From assembly GCA_963514005.1 (NCBI GenBank), contig OY740781.1, positions 179,056,001 to 179,120,000 of the forward strand: 64,000 nt of DNA, given 5' to 3'. This document shows positions 35,928 through 46,500 of the stretch, one piece after another; position 1 is the first letter of the stretch, and each line of letters opens with the position of its first letter. The notes below the pieces were generated by a model. The model did not search any database. It was given only the letters and a program-made list of their open reading frames with translations, and had not been told where the DNA came from. A program made the translations under genes and the position numbers. This stretch comes from Raja brachyura (taxonomy: Eukaryota).

Positions 35928-35991
35928 ATGAAGAACAAACAAATACTGAAGCCTTTTGCAGCAATTCTGCTTTTCACAATTGTTGCAGCAG
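35928..35991 (+). CDS. JCHAIN: JCHAIN exon 1 (signal peptide, 64 nt)
   Basis: MKN start as in the mammalian J chain, hydrophobic FAAILLFTIVAA, phase-1 donor G|gtgtgg (weak) that fits exon 2. Confidence 0.82.
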
Positions 35992-38900
35992 GTGTGGCGT
36001 TTAATGATTACATTTTTCATTGTGCAATGTGATAATGTGATGAGTAAATATTTCCTGTTTTCTTAGCAATAGAAACCTCAAAAGTACAAAAACAAAATAA
36101 TAATGAAGACATTTTCTTCCTAAATAATGAGAAACAACAACAATGAGTTGATTGTTTGTGGAGACATTGGTACAAGCATGTGCAGAAATCATCGATTAGA
36201 CTTGTTGTAAATTGATTTGTGGACAGTACTTCAGAGCGGCACCGTGGTGCAGCTGGTAGAGCTGCTGCCTCACAATACCAGAGACCCGGGTTCGATCCTG
36301 ACCTTGGGTGCTGTCTGTGTGGTGTTTGCACGTTCTTTCTGTGATCGCTCGGATTTCCTTTCGGTGTTCTGGTTTTCCCCCACATACCAAAGACGTGCGG
36401 GTTTGTAGGTTAATTCTTTGTCTCCATTTAGTTATTTAAGCAAAGTGTCATAACAGGTCCTAAAGCATTCCATATTGATATCCATACCCAAGCTGATAGG
36501 CCACTGCTATATTGGGCCTCCTTGAGGATTAATTAAGTCTTTTTGAAATAAATAAAACAAAAATAAACAAAAAAATGTAATGAAAATATTTAAAATTCAA
36601 GTAAAATGCAATTGTTGAATATAAATGTATAAATAAATGGTCAGATTCACAAAAAAAGCTTACAAATTTTAAAATCACGTATATAGCAAATTAAAAAATG
36701 AAGTTCTGTTTCTTAAAACTCTACTGTATTTAAGACTCCAAAATACGTTGTTTCATGATTTAATTCAAATTGTAAAATAGTTGATATAATTTTTCAGAGC
36801 GCTGCTATCACCACATTATTTTAGATGGGATAAACCAGATAACCACAAATCCGTCAGCTTAGATAATATAGAGCGGCACAGTGGCAGAGTCTCTTTGTTT
36901 GTGATGAATATTTATGGCATGTTGGTGTCACTGGGAAGCCCAGCACTCATGTCCATTTGGATATCATGTCCATTTCTGTGTCCATTTGGATATCATGTAA
37001 AATCTCCACATTCCTACTTGCTACATTGCTAGGTACCAATGTTGGTTGTGATGAGGATGCAGAGGCTTCAGGAAAACAGACCAGAACTGATTGTGGCAAC
37101 ATGTACATTTGTACGCTTTGGTAGAAAAAATTTAAAGCCAGTCTTTTTAAGTAATTAAAGATTGAACGATGTGATAGAGGAATCTGAGTGTCCATTGACA
37201 TGAATTATTAAAATATAGCATACAGGCGCAACAAGAAATGAGTTATGTTGGCTTTTATTGCAAGAGGATTAGAGTACAAAAATACAAATGGCTTAAAACA
37301 ATTATCTAGGCTTACTGAGGCTGTACATACCTGCCTAATTTGGGAAGGGTAGATTCACCAGAAAATGCAACAAAGGTTCACCAGCTGATTCCAATGAGAG
37401 AGGTTGTGTTGTACGAGGTTTGATTAAACAGATTGGGACCAGGCTCTCTTACATCAATCTCTTAGATTAACGAGAAAAAGAGGTGATCTCACTGAAATAT
37501 ATGAAATCTCTATGAGACTTGACAGGATAGATTTAGGGATTCTTTCCCTTGACTGGGGAGGCTAAAATCATTCAGGTATCAGATGACAAAAAAATCACCG
37601 CAAAGGTAATAAATGTTAGGAATTCTCTATCCAAGGAATTTGTGGAAGAGAGTCACAGAGAGCAAAAGATTTCTAGATATTACGGGAATGAGCTTGGTAC
37701 AAAAAAACAATGTTGAGGGGAAAGAACTGCAATGATCTTAACAAACAACAGAGGCACAAGGGTACGTAAGGCCGACTCCTGTTTATTTTTCCTATGTCCT
37801 TAACATTTTAATAAACATTTGCTTTTTCAGAGGATCTTTAAATGGTTTTACTCATGGGTCATATAGAGCAATTTACCATTTGTAACGAAGACTTGAATAA
37901 AGTTATTATTTTCTGAATAAATCAAGGTATATTATTTTGCACAGTGACACCTGCTATGTGGTAGATTGTTCTGATATCAGTAATAAATGTCACAAAAACT
38001 AATTTCTCATTAAACTACGCTGATGAGGTCTGGGCATTCAGGGATGGTGTTTACAATCATCTAGAATTTTGCTCATCAGATTTTCCTTTCCCATCGTCTA
38101 TTCTTGCCAGCCAGTGCCAACCCCAGCGCACCAATATCCTTTTATTAAAGACCATCGATCCTTTGTATTTTGCTCTTATTAACAATAGTTTTAGAACATG
38201 CAGTTGATGAGCATAACTGTCTTAACTGTATATAGACACCAAAGTGCTGGAGTAACTTAGTGGGTCAGGCAGCATCTCTGGAGAAAAAGGACGTGTGACT
38301 GTTCGGGTTGGGACCCTTCTTCAGACTGTTGTTTCAGTCTGAAGAAGGGTCCCGACCCGAAGCATCACCTATCCTATTTCTCCAGAAATGCTGCCTGACC
38401 CACTAAGTTACTCCAGCACTTTGTGTCTATCTTTGATATAAACCAATGCCTGCAGTTCTTTGTTTCTATATCTTGTCTTTACATTAATAGTTTTTTCTGT
38501 ACTTGCAAGCCAATGAACAGATACATTCAATTTGCACCTGGACATTGTAACTTCCACACTTATAATAAGTGCTACTGATTCAGAAAGTTAATAACCACAT
38601 CTATTTTCTTACAGCTGATGCTGAAAGCCACCTTCTAGTTAAATCACAATGTAAATGCATGACTGTCACATCCAAAACAGCTGTTTCTGTATTGCCTAAT
38701 AGTGGACGCGTGGAGCAGCTCATGAGAGATATACACATTGTGTAAGTAAATGCATTTTCATATGTGAATGTATCCACATGGTTGAAAACATGCAAAGTCT
38801 AATTATTGGAGACTGTGGGCAATTATGTGCTGTGGTTCATCGATTCGTTATCACAAAAAGGAGGTAATCAATACATCAGTCAGACTCAGACCATAACACA

Positions 38901-41900
38901 ACCCCTAACAACCATTCTGATTCCTTGCTTGAGTTATTTCCTGCTTGCTCTATATTCCCCGAAGGCCCTCTGCCTTATACAAATTTAGTACTTTTGCCCC
39001 GTTGTCCCGATATTTCCCTCTTCATTACTATCTTAAAACATATGGAGTTGTGATCACAGTTCCTAAAATGTTCTTCCACAGAAACACCATTGACCTGGCC
39101 AGGCTCATTTCACAATACAAGGTCCAGTATGGTCCCTCCACTAGTTGAACAATCCACAAATTGGTTCACGAAATTCTTTTGGATACACCTTACAAATTCT
39201 GCCCTGTCCTAATCTTTTGCACTAAGGAAATCCCAGTCAATATTGGGGAAGTTAAAGTCATTCATTATAACAACCCCATTCCTGTTGACACTTCCCATAG
39301 TCTGTCTACATATCTTTTCCTCTATCTCCTGTTGGCTATTGCGAGGGTTATAGTATAATTATACAATTATACAATACATTTATTTTCATTTGAACCTCAA
39401 GTATGAAGTTCAAATGAAATTTGGTTTCTGCAGTCATACAACAAGAAAAGAACCAAGACACACAACCAACACAATTTACACAAACATTCATCACAGTAAA
39501 TCTCCTCCTCACTGTGATGGAAGGCAAAGTCTTGTCTCTCCTCTGTGTTCCATTCTGCTCTCGATGTTAAAGTCCCGGCGGGCGATGGCAAGTCCCACGG
39601 CCATTAAGGCCGCACCGGGCGATGTAAGGCCCCGCTCCAGGTCTTAATGTTAATGTTGGAGCCACCGGTGGGCGATGGCAAGTCCCGCGGCCGTTAAAGC
39701 CGCGCCGGGCGATGTAATGCACCGCTCCGGGTCATTTTCAACCCCGCAACTCGGGCGGCAGAAGCTACCATTGCGGGAGCTCCGAGAATGGTTTCCCACC
39801 AGGGACCTGCGAGCTCCCGATGCCACCGTCCACCGGACCTGCGGCTGGAGCCTCCGTGCTCCGGAGTCGGGTCACAGCCGCGCGACACCACAGCTCTCCA
39901 TGCTCCGAAGCAGGCCAGCCCCACGATGGTAAGTCCGCAGGCTCCGCGACTGAAACCCCCAGGTCGTTCCGGTTGGAGGCCGCTCCACGGTGCTAGGCCC
40001 CAACGACAACTCGGTGAGGTTTGTTACTTAATGGGTACAATCATACAGCAGGATGCCCTTTTTTTCTATTGTTACAATAATTACTACTTGGCCATAGGCA
40101 ATAATCTTCCAATTATTATTTTAATTCATGCCTTTCTTCCTTTAATTACTGATATTGCCTACCCACATCAACAATCATGTGGTTGGACAGTCCGTGCTGT
40201 CAGCTGAAAGCTGTCCATGTGCAGAATGACTTAATGGTATTTCGCTGCCAATTTCTGGTAATGTTAAAATGGGTCTTAATTGTTCTTTTATTGCAGAGTT
40301 CCCACGAGGAGCAGAGAGAACATTTCAGATCCAACCTCCCCTCTTCGGAACAAGTTTGTCTACAAAATTTCAGATTTGTATGATTTATATTTTTATCTCT
40401 TTATTTGCAATATATAATTAGAGCAGGTGTTTATGAAAGAACTCCAGATGCTGGAAAAATCGAAAGTAGACAAAAATGCTGGAGAAACTCAGCGGGTGAG
40501 GCAGCATCTATGGAAAGAAGGAATAGGCGACGTTTCAGGTCGAGACCCTTCTAATTTGAGCAGGTTTCAGAACACAGCCCACACCTGGAATCTGGTATTC
40601 AAATTTTAATATGTGGTGTAATTCAGAACAACAAAAATAAAGAGGGAGAAGATTTGATTTTTTGCCTTCCATCAGAGTGAGTAATGTGGGGAATCCGCTG
40701 TGGTGGATGTTTATGTTAACTTCTATGTATTTGTGTGCCACGTTTTTTTTTCGTGTGGCCGTATGGTAATTCGCATACCACTTTGGTACACGTGACAATA
40801 AAAGGCCATTGAAACTTTTGTGCTACAATCAGGCCTCCTTGAGCCATTTCTGAATATTCAGTAACAACTGAATAACTCGGGTTGAATGGTGGTGTCATTA
40901 GTAGAGCTGTTGTCTTCTGCTCCTGTGAGCTTTGATCCAGACCTCGGGTGCTGTTTCATGGAGTTTGTACTATTTCTCTGTGACTATGTGGGATCCTGAA
41001 TATTTTGGTTTCCTCCACGTTTAGAAATCATGAAGGTTGGCAGGTTACCAGGCCATTCTCTATTACCGCTAATGTGTAGACGAGTGGTAGAATCTGAGGA
41101 AGCGTTAATAGTGACTGTGGGGAGAATAAAATGAATTAGTGTTAAATAATTAGGATGTGTGTAAAAATGGATGCTTGATGGTTGCTGCTGACCTGGTGAG
41201 CCAAAAAATCTATCTCCCTGCTGTTTTTCAATATGACTCCATAATTGTATGAATGCTTCAGTTGGACATTTTGGCAAAAAGGAGACCTAAAGGTATATTC
41301 AGAATTGCTTTGGTTTTTAATATTGCCAGAGGAACCATCTTCTCAGATAAGTGAATGGGTAAAATAGTCAAAACAACTGAGGAGATCAGCAGAAAAAGTC
41401 ACAAAATGCAGGAGTAACTCAGTGGGTCAGGCAGCATCTCTGGAGAACATGGATAAGTAATGTTTTGGGTCAGGAGCCTTCTGGCAGAACTTCTTGTCCC
41501 TACAAGGAAATTAGCAGAATGTTTTCATACCGAGGATGATTAAGATTTTTGATACATCATTATACATAATGTGAAAGAGCAATTTCAAATAACAATAGAA
41601 ACTATATTTAAAGAGGATTAATTTGCAGAGTTTGGGAGAAAAAGCTGGAAGTGGAAATGAACTTCACATTTATTTTGAGACACCACAAACATGGCCGTCT
41701 GAATGATTTCCAATGTTCCAAAGTTGTGCTCAATGGCATATTGACAATAGTGAAAGGACAACAAAATAAGTGGTGATATGTGGTTTAGATTAAAACCAGA
41801 ATTTTCCTAACAATTCATGTTCTCATGGCTCAGATATAACTGATGGAAGCTTGGTGGAAGTTTCCTTTAAATGCATAAGGGGATCTTTTATTTATTTGAT

Positions 41901-43216
41901 AAATAATTCCAAGACAATTCTTTGTCATGTTTTCATTCATTTTGCATTGGTTTGACCTATCGACTTCAGGTTAAATGATAGGGAACACCTATATTTACAC
42001 AGTTAAATCTTTTTATGGCTTTCTTCCAACGTAAGTATGACATGGGATATTGAGGCACTGGTAAGGAAAATGGACGCATATTTCAGGTATAGGCATCTGG
42101 GATCAAGTGAATCTCTTGAGGAGTATAAGAGATGTAGGACTATACAGAAGAAGGAAATCAGGAGGGCAAGAAGAGGAACTCCTGAATAGTAAGTTTGTGG
42201 ATTAAATCATTATTGGTGATGTAGTGGATAATGAAGACAGTTATCTAAGATTATAACAGGAGCTGGATGAATTGGAGGAGCGAGCCAAGTAATTGCAGAT
42301 GGAATTTAACTTTGACAAATGCCTAATGCAAGTTAAACCTGCGCATGATATACACAGTAAATGGTAGGACCCTGGAGAGTATTGTAGAATGCAGGGGCTT
42401 AGAGTTAAAGGTACATAGTTCCCTGAAAGTCGCAACACAGATAGAAAGGGGGGTGGGATGAAGAAGGTGTTTGGCACACTTCCCTTTATTGGTTAGGGGC
42501 TATTTCCATTCACTATGGAACTTTAGACGTCATGTTACAGTTCTAAAAGTCGTGGTGAGACCACACTTGGTGTTCTATGTGCAGTCCTGCTCACCAAGCT
42601 ACAGGAAAGATGTCATTAATCTGATAAGGGGAGAGAATAAATGTATGGGGATGTCACATGGATTGGAAGGTTTGAGTTACAAAGAGAGGCGAAATGGGCT
42701 GGGACTTTTACCCCTGGATTGTAGGAGGTAGTGTGGTGACCTTATAGAGGTATATGTGATCAGGAGGAGTGTGAAGTAAGTGGATGATCACAGCATTTTC
42801 CCAGGGGGGGGGCGGGGGGGGGGGGGGGGGTGAAGATTTAAAGGGATGGGAGGGATAATTTTTCTCCACGACGAGGGTGATGGGCTTAGAGATCAAGCTA
42901 CCAGAATGAGTTGCAGAGGTGGATATAGTTACAATGTTAAAAAACATTTGGACAGATAAGTGGATAGAAAAGGTTCAGAGGGATAGGGGAAACTGGGCTA
43001 GCTCAGTTTGACATGTTGGTTAGCATGAGGGAGTTGGGCTGAAGGGCATATTTCTGTGCGGCACAGCTCCACGACTGTGTTCATGAGAAATATATCTTTG
43101 ATCATTTATTTTGTTGCAGCTGCAAGAATTGCAACCAAAAGCCAACTTTACCTGGAGAACCCCAATGCAAACCCCCACCTCCCCCTGCAGACACCTGCTA
43201 CGGCCGTAACATCTAG
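35928..43216 (+). CDS. JCHAIN: Immunoglobulin J chain, join(35928-35991,38615-38741,40297-40377,43120-43216), 122 aa
   Basis: Spliced translation MKNKQILKPFAAILLFTIVAA-ADAESHLLVKSQCKCMTVTSKTAVSVLPNSGRVEQLMRDIHIV-VPTRSRENISDPTSPLRNKFVYKISDF-CKNCNQKPTLPGEPQCKPPPPPADTCYGRNI*. Carries the J-chain signature RENISDPTSPLR with the NIS sequon, plus CKC, CxxC and TCY. Four exons, intron phases 1,2,2. Confidence 0.97.
36235..36415 (+). mobile_element. HE1/V-SINE-like SINE in JCHAIN intron 1
   Basis: A box tggtgcagctgg, B box ggttcgatcc, V-domain-like core. Confidence 0.8.
37170..37800 (+). mobile_element. Old degenerate CR1 fragment in JCHAIN intron 1
   Basis: CR1-like nucleotide motifs such as ggcttttattgcaagaggattagagtacaaa and gaggtgatctcactgaaa. 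Confidence 0.6.
38233..38468. repeat. Head-to-head Penelope-derived terminal-repeat palindrome (others about 32400-32560, 34799-34967, 58330-58520)
   Basis: 38233-38328 is the near reverse complement of 38335-38429; the unit is homologous to the Penelope terminal sequence at 34076-34205. Confidence 0.85.
38615..38741 (+). CDS. JCHAIN: JCHAIN exon 2 (127 nt)
   Basis: Acceptor ctattttcttacag|; LLVKSQCKCMTVTS resembles mammalian VLVDNKCKCARITS; donor GT|gtaagt. Confidence 0.96.
39355..40012 (-). mobile_element. Non-autonomous GC-rich retroposon in JCHAIN intron 2
   Basis: The reverse complement of 39915-40010 matches 29021-29122; same 3' module with an atacaa-type tail. Confidence 0.75.
40297..40377 (+). 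CDS. JCHAIN: JCHAIN exon 3 (81 nt)
   Basis: Acceptor ttcttttattgcag|, VPTRSRENISDPTSPLRNKFVYKISD, donor TT|gtatga. Confidence 0.98.
42040..43075 (+). mobile_element. Old degenerate CR1 fragment in JCHAIN intron 3
   Basis: Degenerate CR1 RT/C-terminal residues (VRPHL..YVQ..SP.YRKD, LSYKER). Confidence 0.7.
43120..43216 (+). CDS. JCHAIN: JCHAIN exon 4, coding part
   Basis: Acceptor ttattttgttgcag|, (F)CKNC...PQC...DTCYGRNI, then TAG at 43214-43216. Confidence 0.9.
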
Positions 43217-43521
43217 AGAATGCCTATACCGTCAAAACACCATGGGAACCAAATGGATGGTGCGTGGAATCCCAAACGCCACTGGAATCCACAGCCTACA
43301 GCGCCCTCTACTGAAATATCACATGATCAGCCTCCATGTCAGATGTTGTTCAACCACATTGTGTTTTCTTAATGCATTTTTAGCTTTATATAGTTGTACT
43401 TGCTTTTTGTCTTCATTGAACATATAAAATGCTTCATTGCTTCAAAACTTGTTTTGTGAAAATCCCGTTCTTTGACGTAGCATAATTTCTAATTTGTCAT
43501 TTTACTTTTTTTTAATGACAA

Positions 43522-46500
43522 TAGACAATGGGTGCTGGAGTAGGCCATTTGACCCTTCGAGCCAGTACCAGCATTCAATGTGATCATGGCTGATTATCCC
43601 CAATCAGTACCCCGTTCCTGCCTTCTCCCCATATCCCCTGACTCTGCTATTTTTAAGAGCCCTATCTAGCTCTCTCTTGAAAACATCCAGAGAACCTGCC
43701 TCCACTGCCCTCTGAGGCAGAGAATTCCACAGACTCACCACTCTCTGTGAGAAAAAGTGTTTCCTCGTCTCCGTTCTAAATGGCTTAGTTCTTATTCTTA
43801 AACTGTGGCCCCTGGTTCTGGACTCCCCCAACATCGGGAACATGTTTCCTGCCTCTAGTGTGTCCAAGCCCTTCACAGTCTTCTGTTTCAATGAGATCCC
43901 CTCTCATACTTCTAAACTCCAGAGTGCACAAGCCCAGCTGCTCCATTCTCTCAGCATATGACAGTCCCGCCATCCCGGGAATTAACTTTGTAAACCTATG
44001 CTGCACTCCTTCAATAGCAAGAATGTCCTTCCTCAAATTAGGGGACCAAAACTGCACACAATACTGCAGGTGTAGTCTCATTAGGGCTCTGTACAACTGC
44101 AGAAGGACCTCTTTGCTCCTATATTCAATTCCTCTTGTTATAAAGGCCCACCTGCGATTCACTTTATTCACTGCCTGCTGTACCTGCCTGCTTACTTTCA
44201 TAGACTGATGTACAAGGTCCCCCAGATCCCATTGTACTTCCCCTTTTCCCAACTTGACGCCATTTAGATAATAATAATCTGCCTTCCTGTTTTTGGTACA
44301 AAGTGGATAACCTCACATTTATCCGCATTAAACTTCATCTACCATGCATCTGCCCGCTCCCCCAACCTGTCCAAGTCACCCTGCATTCTCATAGCATCCT
44401 CCTCACAGTTCACACTGCCACCCAGCTTTGTGTCAGTTGCAAATTTGCTAATGTTACTTTGAATCCCTTCATCCAAATCATTGATTTATATTGTAAATAG
44501 CTGTGGTCCCAGCACCGAGCCTTGCGGTACCCCACAAGTCACTGCCTGTCATTTTGAAAGGGACCCGTTAATCCCTACTCTTTGTTTTCTGTCTGCCAAC
44601 CACTTCTCTATCCATGTCAGCACTCTACCCCCAATACCATGTGCCCTAATTTTGCCCAATAATCTCCTATGTGGGACCTTATCAAATGCTTTCTGAAAGT
44701 CCAGGTACACTACATCCACTGGCTCTCCCTTGTCCATTTTCCTAGTTACATCTTCAAAAAATTCCAGAAGATTAGTCAAGCATGATTTCCCCTTCGTAAA
44801 TCCATGCTGACTCGGACCGATCCTGTTACTGCTATCCAAATGTGCGGCTATTTCATCTTTTATAATTGACTCCAGCATCTTCCCCACCACCGATGTCAGG
44901 CTAACTGGTCTATAATTCCCCGTTTTCTCTCACCTGCCTTTCTTAAAAAGTGGGATAACATAAGGTACATTGGGATAACATTACCCTCCAATCCACAGGA
45001 ACTGATCCAGAGTCTATAGAACATTGGAAAATTATCACCAATGCATCCACGATTTCTAGAGCCACTTCCTTAAGTACCCTGGGATGCAGACCATTAGGCC
45101 CTGGGGATTTATCAGTCTATCCAACACCATTTCCTGCCTAATGTGGATTTCCTTCAGTTCCTCTGTCACCCAGATACTCTGGCCACTACTATATCAGGCA
45201 TATTGTTTGTGTTCTCCTTAGTGAAGACAGATCCAAAGTGCCTGTTCAACTCATCTGTCATTTCCTTGTTCCCCATAATAAATTCACCTTCAAGGGTCCA
45301 ACTTTGGTCTTAACTAATTTTTTCCTCTTTGCATACCTAAAGAAGCTTTTACTGTCCTGCTTTATATTCTTGACTAGCTTACCTTCGTACCTCATCTTTT
45401 CTCCCCGTATTGTCTTTTTGGTTATCTTCTGTTGTTCTTTAAACATTATCCAATCCTCTTGCTTCCTGCTCATCTTTGCTACGTTGTACTTCTTCGCTTT
45501 AATTTTTATACTGTCCCTGACGTCCCTTGTCAGCCATGGTCGTCTCTTTCTCCCCTTGGAATCTTTCTTCCTCCTAGGAATGAACTGATCCTGCACCTTC
45601 TGTATTATTCCTAGAAACACCTGCCATTTTTGTTCCACTGTCATCCCTGCTAGGGTATCTTTCCAGTCAACTTTGGCCAGCTCCCCCCTCGTGGCCCCAT
45701 AGTCCCCTTTATTCAACTGCAACACTGACACCTCCTATCTACTCTTCTCCCTCTCCAATTGTAGATTAAACCTGACCATGTTATGGTCACTGCCTCCTAA
45801 TGGCTCATTAACCTTGAGGTCCTTTATCAAATCCGGTTCATTACATAACACTAAATCCAGAATTGCCTTCTCCCTGGTAGGCTCCAATACAAGCTGCTCT
45901 AAGAATCCATCATGAAGGCACTCTACAAAGTCCCTTTCTTAGGGTCCAGTACCAACCTGATTTTCCCAGTCTACCTGCATGTTGAAATCTCCCATAACAA
46001 CCACAGCATTACCTTTGCTACATGCCAATTTTAACTCCTGATTCAACTTGCACCCTATGTCCAGGCTACTGTTTGGGGGCCTGTACATAAGTCCCATTAG
46101 GGTCTTTTTACCCTTACAATTCCTTAGTTCTATCCACACTGACTCCACATCTCCTGTTTCAATGTCACCCCTTGCAAGGGACTGAATGTCATTCCTCACC
46201 AACAGGGCAGCGCCACCCCCTCTGCCCACCTGTTTGCCTTTTCGATCGGAGTTATACCTTGAATATTCAGTTCCCAGCCCTGGCCCCCTTGCAGCCATGT
46301 CTCAGTAATTCCCACAACATCATACTTGCCAGTTTCTGAGCCTCAAGCTCATCCACTTTATTCCTTATACTTCGCGCATTCATATACAGTACGAGGACCT
46401 CTGTATTCACTTCCCCCCTCGCAATTGGCTCTGACCTTACTCTGTTGTCCATTCTCAAGCTTTCCTTCCCATTAACTCGAGAATCTTTTGTAATTTTTCC

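What the first reader, a model, noticed from the sequence alone, without database searches (positions are those of the whole stretch)
43193..43314. J chain is truncated by a frameshift; a J-chain-like C-terminal tail persists out of frame
Seen: the frame ends DTCYGRNI* (TAG 43214-43216). From 43213 another frame reads LENAYTVKTPWEPNGWCVESQTPLESTAYSALY* (TGA 43312-43314), which lines up by eye with mammalian RNKCYTAVVPLVYGGETKMVETALTPDACYPD (YT...P...G......T.L). The spacer between TCY and AYT is 20 nt, not a multiple of three. Established: the mammalian C-terminal segment (disulfide between Cys 7 and 8) contributes to pIgR/secretory-component binding, and those cysteines are reported missing in nurse shark. 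Inference: either a real lineage-specific loss of the tail that leaves a minimal J chain, or a 1-2 nt assembly error or polymorphism.
Basis: partly seen in the sequence, partly recalled or inferred. Interest (0 to 1): 0.8.

Follow-up and report, generated by a model that had tools for sequence, protein, structure and literature searches.

The report
Skate J chain lost its tail

Summary
The window holds an intact four-exon J-chain gene on the + strand (369 nt, 122 codons plus TAG at 43214-43216). The short ending ...DTCYGRNI* is not an assembly error. An independent contig from organism A covers 42878-43476 with no indel. Seven deposited skate J chains from five species and two families are all 122 aa and end at the same residue.

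Rays and sharks carry 40-58 more residues after the same TCY. A decayed copy of that tail lies in the skate 3' UTR:
- Cys7 segment TSRECLYRQNTMG, 43209-43247, +1 frame.
- GNQMDGAWNPKRHWNPQPTAPSTEISHD, 43244-43327, CDS frame.
- SASMSD, 43327-43344, +2 frame.

All but the six-residue SASMSD were tested against shuffles and score far above them. The ancestral frame has no stop. A net +1-nt shift at about 43202-43214 brings TAG into frame, so a frameshift most likely caused the truncation.

Its likeness to mammalian tails is at chance level (p 0.17-0.5), with no Pfam or PDB match.

The result is a natural J chain without hairpin 3, which is dispensable for IgM pentamers in human mutants. The protein itself is already in databases. 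No RNA reads or relatives' DNA could be obtained.

The parts
35928..35991 (+). J-chain exon 1: start codon and signal peptide (MKNKQILKPFAAILLFTIVAA, plus the first base of the next codon); donor G|gtgtgg
   Evidence: tblastn of seven skate J chains places residues 1-24 at 35928-35999, 79-83% identity.
38615..38741 (+). J-chain exon 2: ...DAESHLLVKSQCKCMTVTSK...RDIHI, with the CxC motif (Cys1, Cys2); donor GT|gtaagt
   Evidence: Pfam PF15097 positions 2-40, E 0.002. Skate J chains match at 86-91% identity.
40297..40377 (+). J-chain exon 3: VPTRSRENISDPTSPLRNKFVYKISD(F), with the conserved N-glycosylation block NIS
   Evidence: Pfam PF15097 positions 41-67, 40 bits, E 4e-10. Human J chain in PDB (6kxs_J) matches at E 1.4e-8.
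43120..43216 (+). J-chain exon 4, coding part: CKNCNQKPTLPGEPQCKPPPPPADTCYGRNI plus TAG (43214-43216). It carries Cys3-Cys6 and ends just before the position of Cys7.
   Evidence: Skate J-chain residues 92-122 match at 84-97% identity and end at the same residue. An organism A contig covers it without an indel.
43202..43214 (+). Inferred site of the truncating lesion: a net +1-nt shift between TCY and the relic Cys7 segment, which brings TAG (spanning the old codons TCT|AGA) into frame
   Evidence: Frameshift-aware protein-to-DNA alignment places a +1 shift at 43203-43214 for Pristis, Narcine, Heptranchias, Pristiophorus and Cetorhinus. The +1 frame is open from 43056 to 43427.
43209..43247 (+). 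Tail relic A, +1 frame: TSRECLYRQNTMG, equivalent to ancestral DN[KR][KE]CLY[HR]KINLG (old Cys7 codon TGC 43221-43223)
   Evidence: Best ungapped scores are 32-37 against a null of 1.8 +/- 5.3; 0-2 of 5000 dinucleotide shuffles reach them, and the best hit is always at 43209 in the +1 frame.
43244..43327 (+). Tail relic B, same frame as the CDS: GNQMDGAWNP-KRHWNPQPTAPSTEISHD, equivalent to G[NK]QMDAVxNPEC......HWIPxPTxxPIETTxD. About 6 codons, including the old Cys8, are deleted.
   Evidence: A single tblastn HSP of ray J chains runs through the TAG to 43327. Using post-stop DNA alone, Smith-Waterman scores are 73/69/56 against a null of 21 +/- 4.4 (max 47-51); 0 of 3000 shuffled frames reach them.
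43327..43344 (+). Tail relic C, +2 frame: SASMSD, equivalent to the ancestral C-terminus S[AS]SMSDAP*
   Evidence: Exact 6/6 match to the Heptranchias tail and 5/5 to Pristiophorus. All long-tail alignments call a -1 shift at 43328. The piece is short and counts only because it is collinear with A and B.
43213..43314 (+).
   Evidence: No Pfam or PDB J-chain match at E <= 10. Against mammalian tails, p is 0.17-0.5. Against ray tails, the frame scores SW 27-35, p 0.014-0.1 over 43219-43362, which includes SASMSD beyond the TGA, and tblastn gives E 0.19-2.4.

Best explanation
This is the functional J-chain (JCHAIN) gene of a skate. In the stem lineage of skates (Rajiformes), a net one-nucleotide insertion just after the Cys6 codon (about 43202-43214) shifted the reading frame, and a TAG followed within three codons. 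That removed everything from Cys7 onward: the Cys7-Cys8 hairpin (hairpin 3 of the human protein) and the roughly 30-residue C-terminal extension that rays and sharks carry. The abandoned coding sequence became 3' UTR and has since decayed through two further 1-nt shifts and a deletion of about 6 codons, but it is still recognisable. The 122-aa product (about 100 aa mature) keeps the parts needed to clasp IgM tailpieces: the CxC and CxxC cysteine motifs, the Cys1-Cys6 and Cys4-Cys5 bridges, and the N-glycan site. It therefore most likely still joins pentameric IgM while lacking the surface that in mammals binds pIgR/secretory component. Shown here: the gene model, the stop, its conservation across skates, and the relic with its frames. 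Inferred: the order of events (frameshift first), and function in IgM assembly.
For: Gene model: four exons with GT-AG sites, 369 nt = 122 codons plus stop. Exons 2 and 3 match Pfam Ig_J_chain, and exon 3 matches human J chain in PDB. All four exons match skate J chains at 79-97% identity.

Real sequence: an organism A contig of 599 nt covers 42878-43476 with 1 substitution and 0 gaps. Organisms B and C show only 43208 A>G in the exon, giving N->D, the GRDI ending of Leucoraja.

Skate-wide: seven deposited skate J chains are all 122 aa and end GRNI, GRSI, GRDI or GPNI. They are Amblyraja radiata (three), Rhinoraja longicauda (two, Arhynchobatidae), Leucoraja erinacea, and Raja eglanteria AAN62851. 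The Raja eglanteria nucleotide entry AF520475 is cited in PMC3125105.

Long tails elsewhere: four rays (162-176 aa) and eight sharks (155-188 aa) carry 40-58 more residues after TCY.

Relic: post-stop DNA in the CDS frame scores 56-73 against ray tails, null 21 +/- 4.4, 0 of 3000. The +1-frame Cys7 segment is reached by 0-2 of 5000 shuffles. The frameshift-aware alignment gives a collinear path with shifts at about 43203-43214, 43236-43249 and 43328.

No stop in the ancestral (+1) frame from 43056 to 43427.

Functional plausibility: a human J chain lacking hairpin 3 (residues 108-139 deleted) still forms IgM pentamers in vitro (PMC11729874). No pIgR homologue was found in the shark genomes screened (PMC4016189).
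Against: No RNA evidence was obtained for this species: the one run guessed to be RNA (X15) had no depth on any exon. Expression therefore rests on RefSeq models of relatives and the Raja eglanteria entry, whose mRNA origin I could not check. The lesion is therefore placed only by protein-to-DNA alignment, and its exact base is unknown. Hypanus and Mobula, whose sequences differ around Cys7, align without the first frameshift. The organism B contig has one 1-nt gap somewhere in 42874-43476 that the tool did not place; three adjacent mismatches at 43397-43399 suggest it lies there, but that is inference. Function in IgM assembly is not tested.
Confidence: 0.8

Rival explanations
1. Assembly error or private polymorphism: a 1-2 nt miscall creates a false stop, and the true protein continues to 43314 in the reader's frame.
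For: Only the a priori possibility, and the fact that the position of one 1-nt gap in the organism B contig was not shown.
Against: The organism A contig covers 42878-43476 with 0 gaps. Seven deposited skate proteins from five species have the same length and C-terminus.
Confidence: 0.01
2. Plain nonsense mutation: the stop arose in frame, and both frameshifts around the Cys7 segment came later, during decay of the UTR.
For: Most of the relic (43244-43327) is in the same frame as the CDS. tblastn and the Hypanus and Mobula alignments run through the TAG without a shift.
Against: The 27 nt just behind the stop (43217-43243) show nothing of the ancestral tail in frame, whereas the +1 frame there reads RECLYRQNTMG (0-2 of 5000 shuffles). 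The ancestral frame has no stop from 43056 to 43427, and the TAG straddles two codons of that frame. A stop that predates the shift would need an extra, now invisible, event.
Confidence: 0.12
3. Decaying pseudogene: the skate J chain as a whole is on its way out, as in teleosts, and the short ORF is a remnant.
For: The gene has lost about a third of the ancestral mature protein. No RNA support was obtained here.
Against: All splice sites, the start codon and six cysteines are intact. Length and C-terminus are identical across two skate families, and Amblyraja keeps three such J-chain-like sequences and Rhinoraja two. The coding exons are 79-97% identical to other skates. An entry named immunoglobulin J chain exists for Raja eglanteria.
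Confidence: 0.04
4. No relic at all: the likeness of the 3' UTR to ray tails is chance.
For: Each piece is short, and three frames were searched.
Against: 0 of 3000 and 0-2 of 5000 shuffles reach the observed scores (z about 7-12). The pieces are collinear and in the expected place and order.
Confidence: 0.02

Closest known systems
Skate J chains already deposited: Raja eglanteria AAN62851.1 / AF520475; RefSeq 'immunoglobulin J chain-like' of Amblyraja radiata (XP_032873082, XP_032873228, XP_032873212), Leucoraja erinacea (XP_055502907) and Rhinoraja longicauda (XP_078268268, XP_078262610)
   Same: All are 122 aa with the same exon-by-exon sequence (79-97% identity), the same six cysteines and the same C-terminus ...ADTCYG[RP][NSD]I.
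   Different: There are a few substitutions, and none is identical to the window, so this is another skate species. The records give only the protein. None of the papers I could search mentions the truncation or the fossil tail.
Long J chains of rays and sharks (Pristis pectinata, Mobula birostris, Hypanus sabinus, Narcine bancroftii; Heptranchias, Pristiophorus, Cetorhinus and others)
   Same: The signal peptide, exons 2-3 and exon 4 up to ...DTCY are 55-77% identical.
   Different: They continue for 40-58 residues. The rays and the two squalomorph sharks have Cys7 and Cys8 (..KCLY.. / ..NPEC..). All except Narcine end in a conserved PT..P[IV]ETT.D..S.SDAP. In the skate this survives only as a frame-broken fossil in the UTR.
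Nurse shark J chain (Hohman et al. 2003, J Immunol 170:6016; cited in PMC4279169 and PMC3743840)
   Same: It is a cartilaginous-fish J chain with a poorly conserved C-terminal part that lacks the C-terminal cysteine pair needed for secretory-component binding. It is present in pentameric IgM.
   Different: The carpet-shark relatives seen here (Rhincodon, Hemiscyllium) keep a full-length but diverged tail and lack Cys2. The skate keeps Cys1-6 and has no tail at all. I did not have the nurse shark sequence itself.
Engineered human J chain without hairpin 3 (residues 108-139 deleted; Giannone et al. 2024, PMC11729874)
   Same: The cut is at essentially the same place, just before Cys7. The CxC and CxxC motifs and hairpin 2 are retained.
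   Different: That is a laboratory mutant of the human protein. It forms pentamers with a hexamer shoulder in vitro. The skate form is natural and fixed, and its hairpin 2 is shorter (11 instead of 19 residues between Cys4 and Cys5).
Mammalian J chain (PF15097; PDB 6kxs_J, 6ue7_D)
   Same: It belongs to the same family. Exon 3 is 22/27 identical, including NISDPTSPLR, and Cys1-6 are in equivalent places.
   Different: The mammalian protein has 137 mature residues and is acidic, with the Cys109-Cys134 hairpin that binds pIgR (PMC7956327). The skate protein stops before it.

Membership tests
Immunoglobulin J chain (Pfam PF15097) | Sequence match to the family profile | tested here: met
   Exon 3 alone scores 40 bits (cut-off 27), E 4e-10, profile positions 41-67. 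Exon 2 gives E 0.002, positions 2-40. The exon 4 coding part and the off-frame peptide give no match. Exons were scanned singly; the joined model was not searched.
Immunoglobulin J chain (Pfam PF15097) | N-terminal CxC motif (Cys1, Cys2; Cys2 links to the heavy-chain tailpiece) | tested here: met
   SQCKCMT in exon 2, aligned with mammalian NKCKCVR.
Immunoglobulin J chain (Pfam PF15097) | Conserved N-glycosylation block (R)ENISDPTSP | tested here: met
   SRENISDPTSPLR at 40310-40348.
Immunoglobulin J chain (Pfam PF15097) | CxxC motif (Cys3, Cys4) plus Cys5 and Cys6 (bridges Cys4-Cys5 and Cys1-Cys6) | tested here: met
   FCKNC...PQC...DTCY in exon 4, in aligned columns with all other J chains. 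The disulfide pairing itself is inferred from the human protein (PMC7956327).
Immunoglobulin J chain (Pfam PF15097) | C-terminal hairpin closed by Cys7-Cys8 (the pIgR/secretory-component binding region of mammals) | tested here: not met
   The CDS stops at 43214-43216, before Cys7. The old Cys7 codon survives out of frame at 43221-43223, and the Cys8 region is deleted. This feature also varies in other accepted J chains (galeomorph sharks; lungfish, coelacanth and nurse shark), so its absence does not exclude membership.
Immunoglobulin J chain (Pfam PF15097) | Four-exon gene, with the last exon carrying Cys3 to the C-terminus and the 3' UTR | tested here: met
   Exons at 35928-35991, 38615-38741, 40297-40377 and 43120-43216, all GT-AG, 369 nt. 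The mammalian four-exon layout is from my own knowledge.
Immunoglobulin J chain (Pfam PF15097) | Covalent incorporation into polymeric IgM; expression in plasma cells | not testable with these tools
   No RNA run covered the exons. This needs protein chemistry on skate 19S IgM.
Skate-type (Rajiformes) short J chain | 122-aa precursor ending ...ADTCYG[RP][NSD]I | tested here: met
   The window CDS is 122 codons and ends ADTCYGRNI, identical over that stretch to Amblyraja.

The most novel reading that the evidence does not exclude
Skates are a natural knock-out of the whole J-chain C-terminus, fixed by a one-base frameshift before the two skate families in the sample (Rajidae, Arhynchobatidae) split. 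All sampled sharks and rays except Narcine keep a strongly conserved ending (PT..P[IV]ETT.D..S.SDAP) that has no counterpart in mammals. That ending may therefore bind an unknown elasmobranch partner, for example a receptor or an IgM contact standing in for the missing pIgR. Skates would then have lost or replaced that partner, possibly in connection with their multiple J-chain gene copies. Comparing skates with rays would make this partner findable.
Probability: 0.15. Interest if true: 0.55.

Novelty: already known. Interest (0 to 1): 0.3.

Why it matters
The tail-less J chain is the ordinary, database-annotated state of all sampled skates, so the window holds no error and no new gene. What this analysis adds is small but specific.

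- The lost tail can still be read in the 3' UTR, which points to a single frameshift that arose before the two sampled skate families diverged.
- The comparison shows that rays and squalomorph sharks keep the Cys7-Cys8 pair. The textbook statement, drawn from the nurse shark, that cartilaginous fish lack it does not hold for the whole group.
- Skates offer a natural counterpart to the engineered hairpin-3 deletion of human J chain.

Together these make the role of the J-chain C-terminus in animals without pIgR testable by comparing skates with rays.

Tried and rejected
- Pfam and PDB searches of the off-frame peptide and of the exon 4 coding part found no J-chain match. The only PDB hit of the off-frame peptide was a Bacteroides protein, taken as chance.
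- The one read-laying run was partly wasted on X15, guessed to be RNA. It had no depth on any exon and matched only interspersed repeats, so there is no evidence on transcription, splicing or the poly(A) site. The same call did not show where the single 1-nt gap of the organism B contig lies.
No nucleotide alignment, dating or dN/dS was possible.
- The representative search with the exon 3 ORF gave only six hits at E about 1e-4, one shark and five mammalian models. It served only as an entry point.
- PMC4198949 (Castro and Flajnik 2014) is not held, and Hohman et al. 2003 is not in the library. I could not check whether the skate truncation was discussed there.
No structure prediction was run, because J chain folds only within the Ig polymer.
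- Considered and rejected: assembly error, chance likeness, and a pseudogene (see the rival explanations). Translational recoding into the open +1 frame was also set aside; it was not tested and nothing supports it.
Full report
**1. What is in the sequence**

The frame that carries ...CKNCNQKPTLPGEPQCKPPPPPADTCYGRNI stops at TAG 43214-43216. The frame beginning at 43213 reads LENAYTVKTPWEPNGWCVESQTPLESTAYSALY and stops at TGA 43312-43314.

The stretch is the last exon of a J-chain gene on the + strand:
- Exon 1: 35928-35991.
- Exon 2: 38615-38741.
- Exon 3: 40297-40377.
- Exon 4: 43120-43216.

All splice sites are GT-AG. The four exons total 369 nt, which is 122 codons plus the stop. Exon 3 alone passes the Pfam Ig_J_chain cut-off (40 bits, E 4e-10) and matches human J chain in solved structures (E 1.4e-8). 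Exon 2 matches the profile more weakly. The joined model was not searched.

**2. Is the stop real?**

Yes. Contigs from public runs were laid on 38500-43650.
- A 599-nt contig of organism A covers 42878-43476 with one substitution and no gap.
- Organisms B and C differ within the exon only at 43208 (A>G, Asn to Asp).
- The organism B contig has one 1-nt gap somewhere in its 603 positions, which the tool did not place. Three adjacent mismatches at 43397-43399 suggest it lies there, in the UTR, but that is inference.

The exon 3 ORF led to a basking shark J chain. Searching with that protein gave 14 chondrichthyan J chains, and a cluster look-up added more skates. The seven deposited skate J chains are all 122 aa and end ...ADTCYGRNI, GRSI, GRDI or GPNI:
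- Amblyraja radiata (three).
- Rhinoraja longicauda (two).
- Leucoraja erinacea.
- Raja eglanteria (AAN62851; nucleotide entry AF520475, cited in PMC3125105).

These species span two families, Rajidae and Arhynchobatidae. The window's exons are 79-97% identical to them but identical to none, so this is another skate. Assembly error and private polymorphism are excluded.

**3. What was lost**

Rays (Pristis, Mobula, Hypanus, 175-176 aa; Narcine, 162 aa) and sharks (155-188 aa) continue after the same TCY for 40-58 residues. In the rays and in the squalomorph sharks Heptranchias and Pristiophorus the tail reads roughly:

..DN[KR][KE]C-LY[HR]KINLG[ND]G[KR]Q[MV]DA[VL]LNPEC-L.H...HWIP.PT..P[IV]ETT.D..SMSDAP

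It therefore has both Cys7 and Cys8, aligned with mammalian RNKC...TPDSC, plus an extension with no mammalian counterpart.

**4. The fossil tail**

tblastn of ray J chains on 43001-43600 gives a single HSP that runs through the TAG in the same frame, as far as 43327:

...TCYGRNI*RMPIPSKHHGN--QMDGAWNP------KRHWNPQPTAPSTEISHD

Three tests support a relic:
- Post-stop DNA alone (43217-43362), read in the CDS frame, scores 73, 69 and 56 against the Pristis, Hypanus and Mobula tails. The null is 21 +/- 4.4 with a maximum of 47-51, and 0 of 3000 shuffled frames reach the observed scores.
- The 27 nt just behind the stop carry nothing of the tail in that frame. The +1 frame there reads TSRECLYRQNTMG (43209-43247), matching the ancestral Cys7 segment DNRKCLYRKINLG with scores of 32-37. 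The null is 1.8 +/- 5.3, and 0-2 of 5000 shuffles reach them. The best hit is always at this place and frame.
- The ancestral ending SASMSD appears exactly at 43327-43344 in the +2 frame.

A frameshift-aware protein-to-DNA alignment joins the three pieces collinearly. It places shifts at about 43203-43214 (+1), 43236-43249 (-1) and 43328 (-1), and a gap of about 6 codons that removes the Cys8 region.

**5. How the truncation happened**

The ancestral (+1) frame has no stop anywhere from 43056 to 43427. The TAG straddles two codons of that frame (TCT|AGA). The most 5' lesion is the net +1-nt shift between TCY and the Cys7 segment. The simplest history is therefore a one-base insertion that brought TAG into frame three codons later, followed by neutral decay of what had become 3' UTR.

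The main alternative is a nonsense mutation first and both shifts later. It is not excluded, because Hypanus and Mobula align without the first shift, but it needs an extra unseen step. I give it about 0.12.

All seven skate proteins share the end point, so the event predates the split of the two sampled skate families.

**6.

The idea is right in principle: a frameshift, with a tail persisting out of frame. The evidence offered for it is not. The peptide from 43213 is the +2 frame, an overlapping misreading of the same DNA.

Its likeness to mammalian tails is at chance level. The best ungapped register gives 5-6 identities of 32 (p 0.17-0.5), Smith-Waterman gives p 0.22-0.45, and there is no Pfam or PDB match.

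**7. How it most likely works**

The skate protein keeps the following:
- The CxC motif (QCKC).
- The glycosylation block ENISDP.
- The CxxC motif (FCKNC).
- Cys5 and Cys6.

In human J chain these motifs are required for insertion into nascent IgM pentamers. Deleting hairpin 3 with its two cysteines (residues 108-139) leaves pentamer formation largely intact in vitro, with some hexamers (PMC11729874). That hairpin and the last 25 residues serve pIgR/secretory-component binding and contact Fc-mu (PMC7956327). No pIgR homologue was found in the shark genomes screened (PMC4016189).

I therefore infer that the skate J chain still joins 19S IgM and has shed a part that has no receptor to bind. This is inference: no expression or protein data for this species were obtained.

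One point is unexplained. All sampled sharks and rays except Narcine conserve the ending ..ETT.D..S.SDAP strongly, which suggests it has a function that skates do without.

**8. Novelty**

Poor conservation of the C-terminal part of cartilaginous-fish J chain has been published since 2003. Skate 122-aa J chains are in GenBank and RefSeq. The feature is therefore already known as sequence.

In the searchable papers I found no mention of the skate truncation, the frameshift or the fossil tail. The key 2003 and 2014 papers were not available to me. The fossil tail, and the presence of Cys7-Cys8 in rays and squalomorph sharks, are modest additions.

**9. Limits**

- The single read-laying run gave no RNA coverage.
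- Organism names of the runs are coded.

Noticed in passing
alignment A1 (proteins P0011, P0013-P0017); no window coordinates: The four rays and the squalomorph sharks Heptranchias and Pristiophorus keep both Cys7 (..KCLY..) and Cys8 (..NPEC..). The galeomorph sharks (Cetorhinus, Mustelus, Scyliorhinus, Rhincodon, Hemiscyllium) lack Cys2 (CKLL instead of CKC) and Cys8. The nurse-shark-based view that cartilaginous fish lack the C-terminal pair does not hold for the whole group.
   Followed up: partly
alignment A1, last 20 columns: All sampled sharks and rays except Narcine share a strongly conserved C-terminal extension, KPT..P[IV]ETT.D..S[MIF]SDAP. It has no counterpart in mammalian J chain, and its function is unknown.
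   Followed up: no
P0017 (Narcine bancroftii J chain, 162 aa): The electric ray protein keeps Cys7 and Cys8 but ends early at ..HWIPKTRRSI, without the ETT..SMSDAP ending. This is either a second, independent and smaller C-terminal loss or a gene-model artefact.
   Followed up: no
cluster of P0018; window holds one copy (35928-43216): Amblyraja radiata has three different J-chain-like protein sequences (four accessions) and Rhinoraja longicauda two, all 122 aa and, within each species, from a contig of the same length. Only one copy lies in this window. Organism C shows higher depth and a contig break at 43201-43208, which might reflect paralogues or heterozygosity.
   Followed up: partly
window 43208: A>G in organisms B and C changes the third-last residue from Asn to Asp (GRDI), the state of the Leucoraja erinacea protein. 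The last three residues vary among skates (RNI, RSI, RDI, PNI) while the stop position is fixed.
   Followed up: partly
window 43056-43427: The +1 frame stays open for 123 codons across exon 4 and the UTR, well beyond the relic part that it carries (43209-43247). I take this for chance; there is no evidence of recoding.
   Followed up: no
window 39360-40047, 40392-40735, 41252-41595, 43488-43650: Contig depths of thousands to millions in all four runs mark high-copy interspersed repeats in introns 2 and 3 and just behind the 3' UTR. Many inverted joints link 40466-40552 with 41400-41447, suggesting two copies of one element in opposite orientation.
   Followed up: no
window 43604-44252 (- strand): Two ORFs (95 and 155 aa) have reverse-transcriptase-like wording (..RVVSLWNSLPQRAVEAGSLDVFKRELD..). 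This is probably a LINE fragment directly downstream of the J-chain gene.
   Followed up: no
window 42804-42830: There is a G run of 27 bases in intron 3. Contigs of all the runs break there.
   Followed up: no
window 43217-44330: No AATAAA or ATTAAA occurs between the stop and 44327. The poly(A) site of the gene is undetermined, and the UTR may use a variant signal near 43420 or run through the repeat.
   Followed up: no
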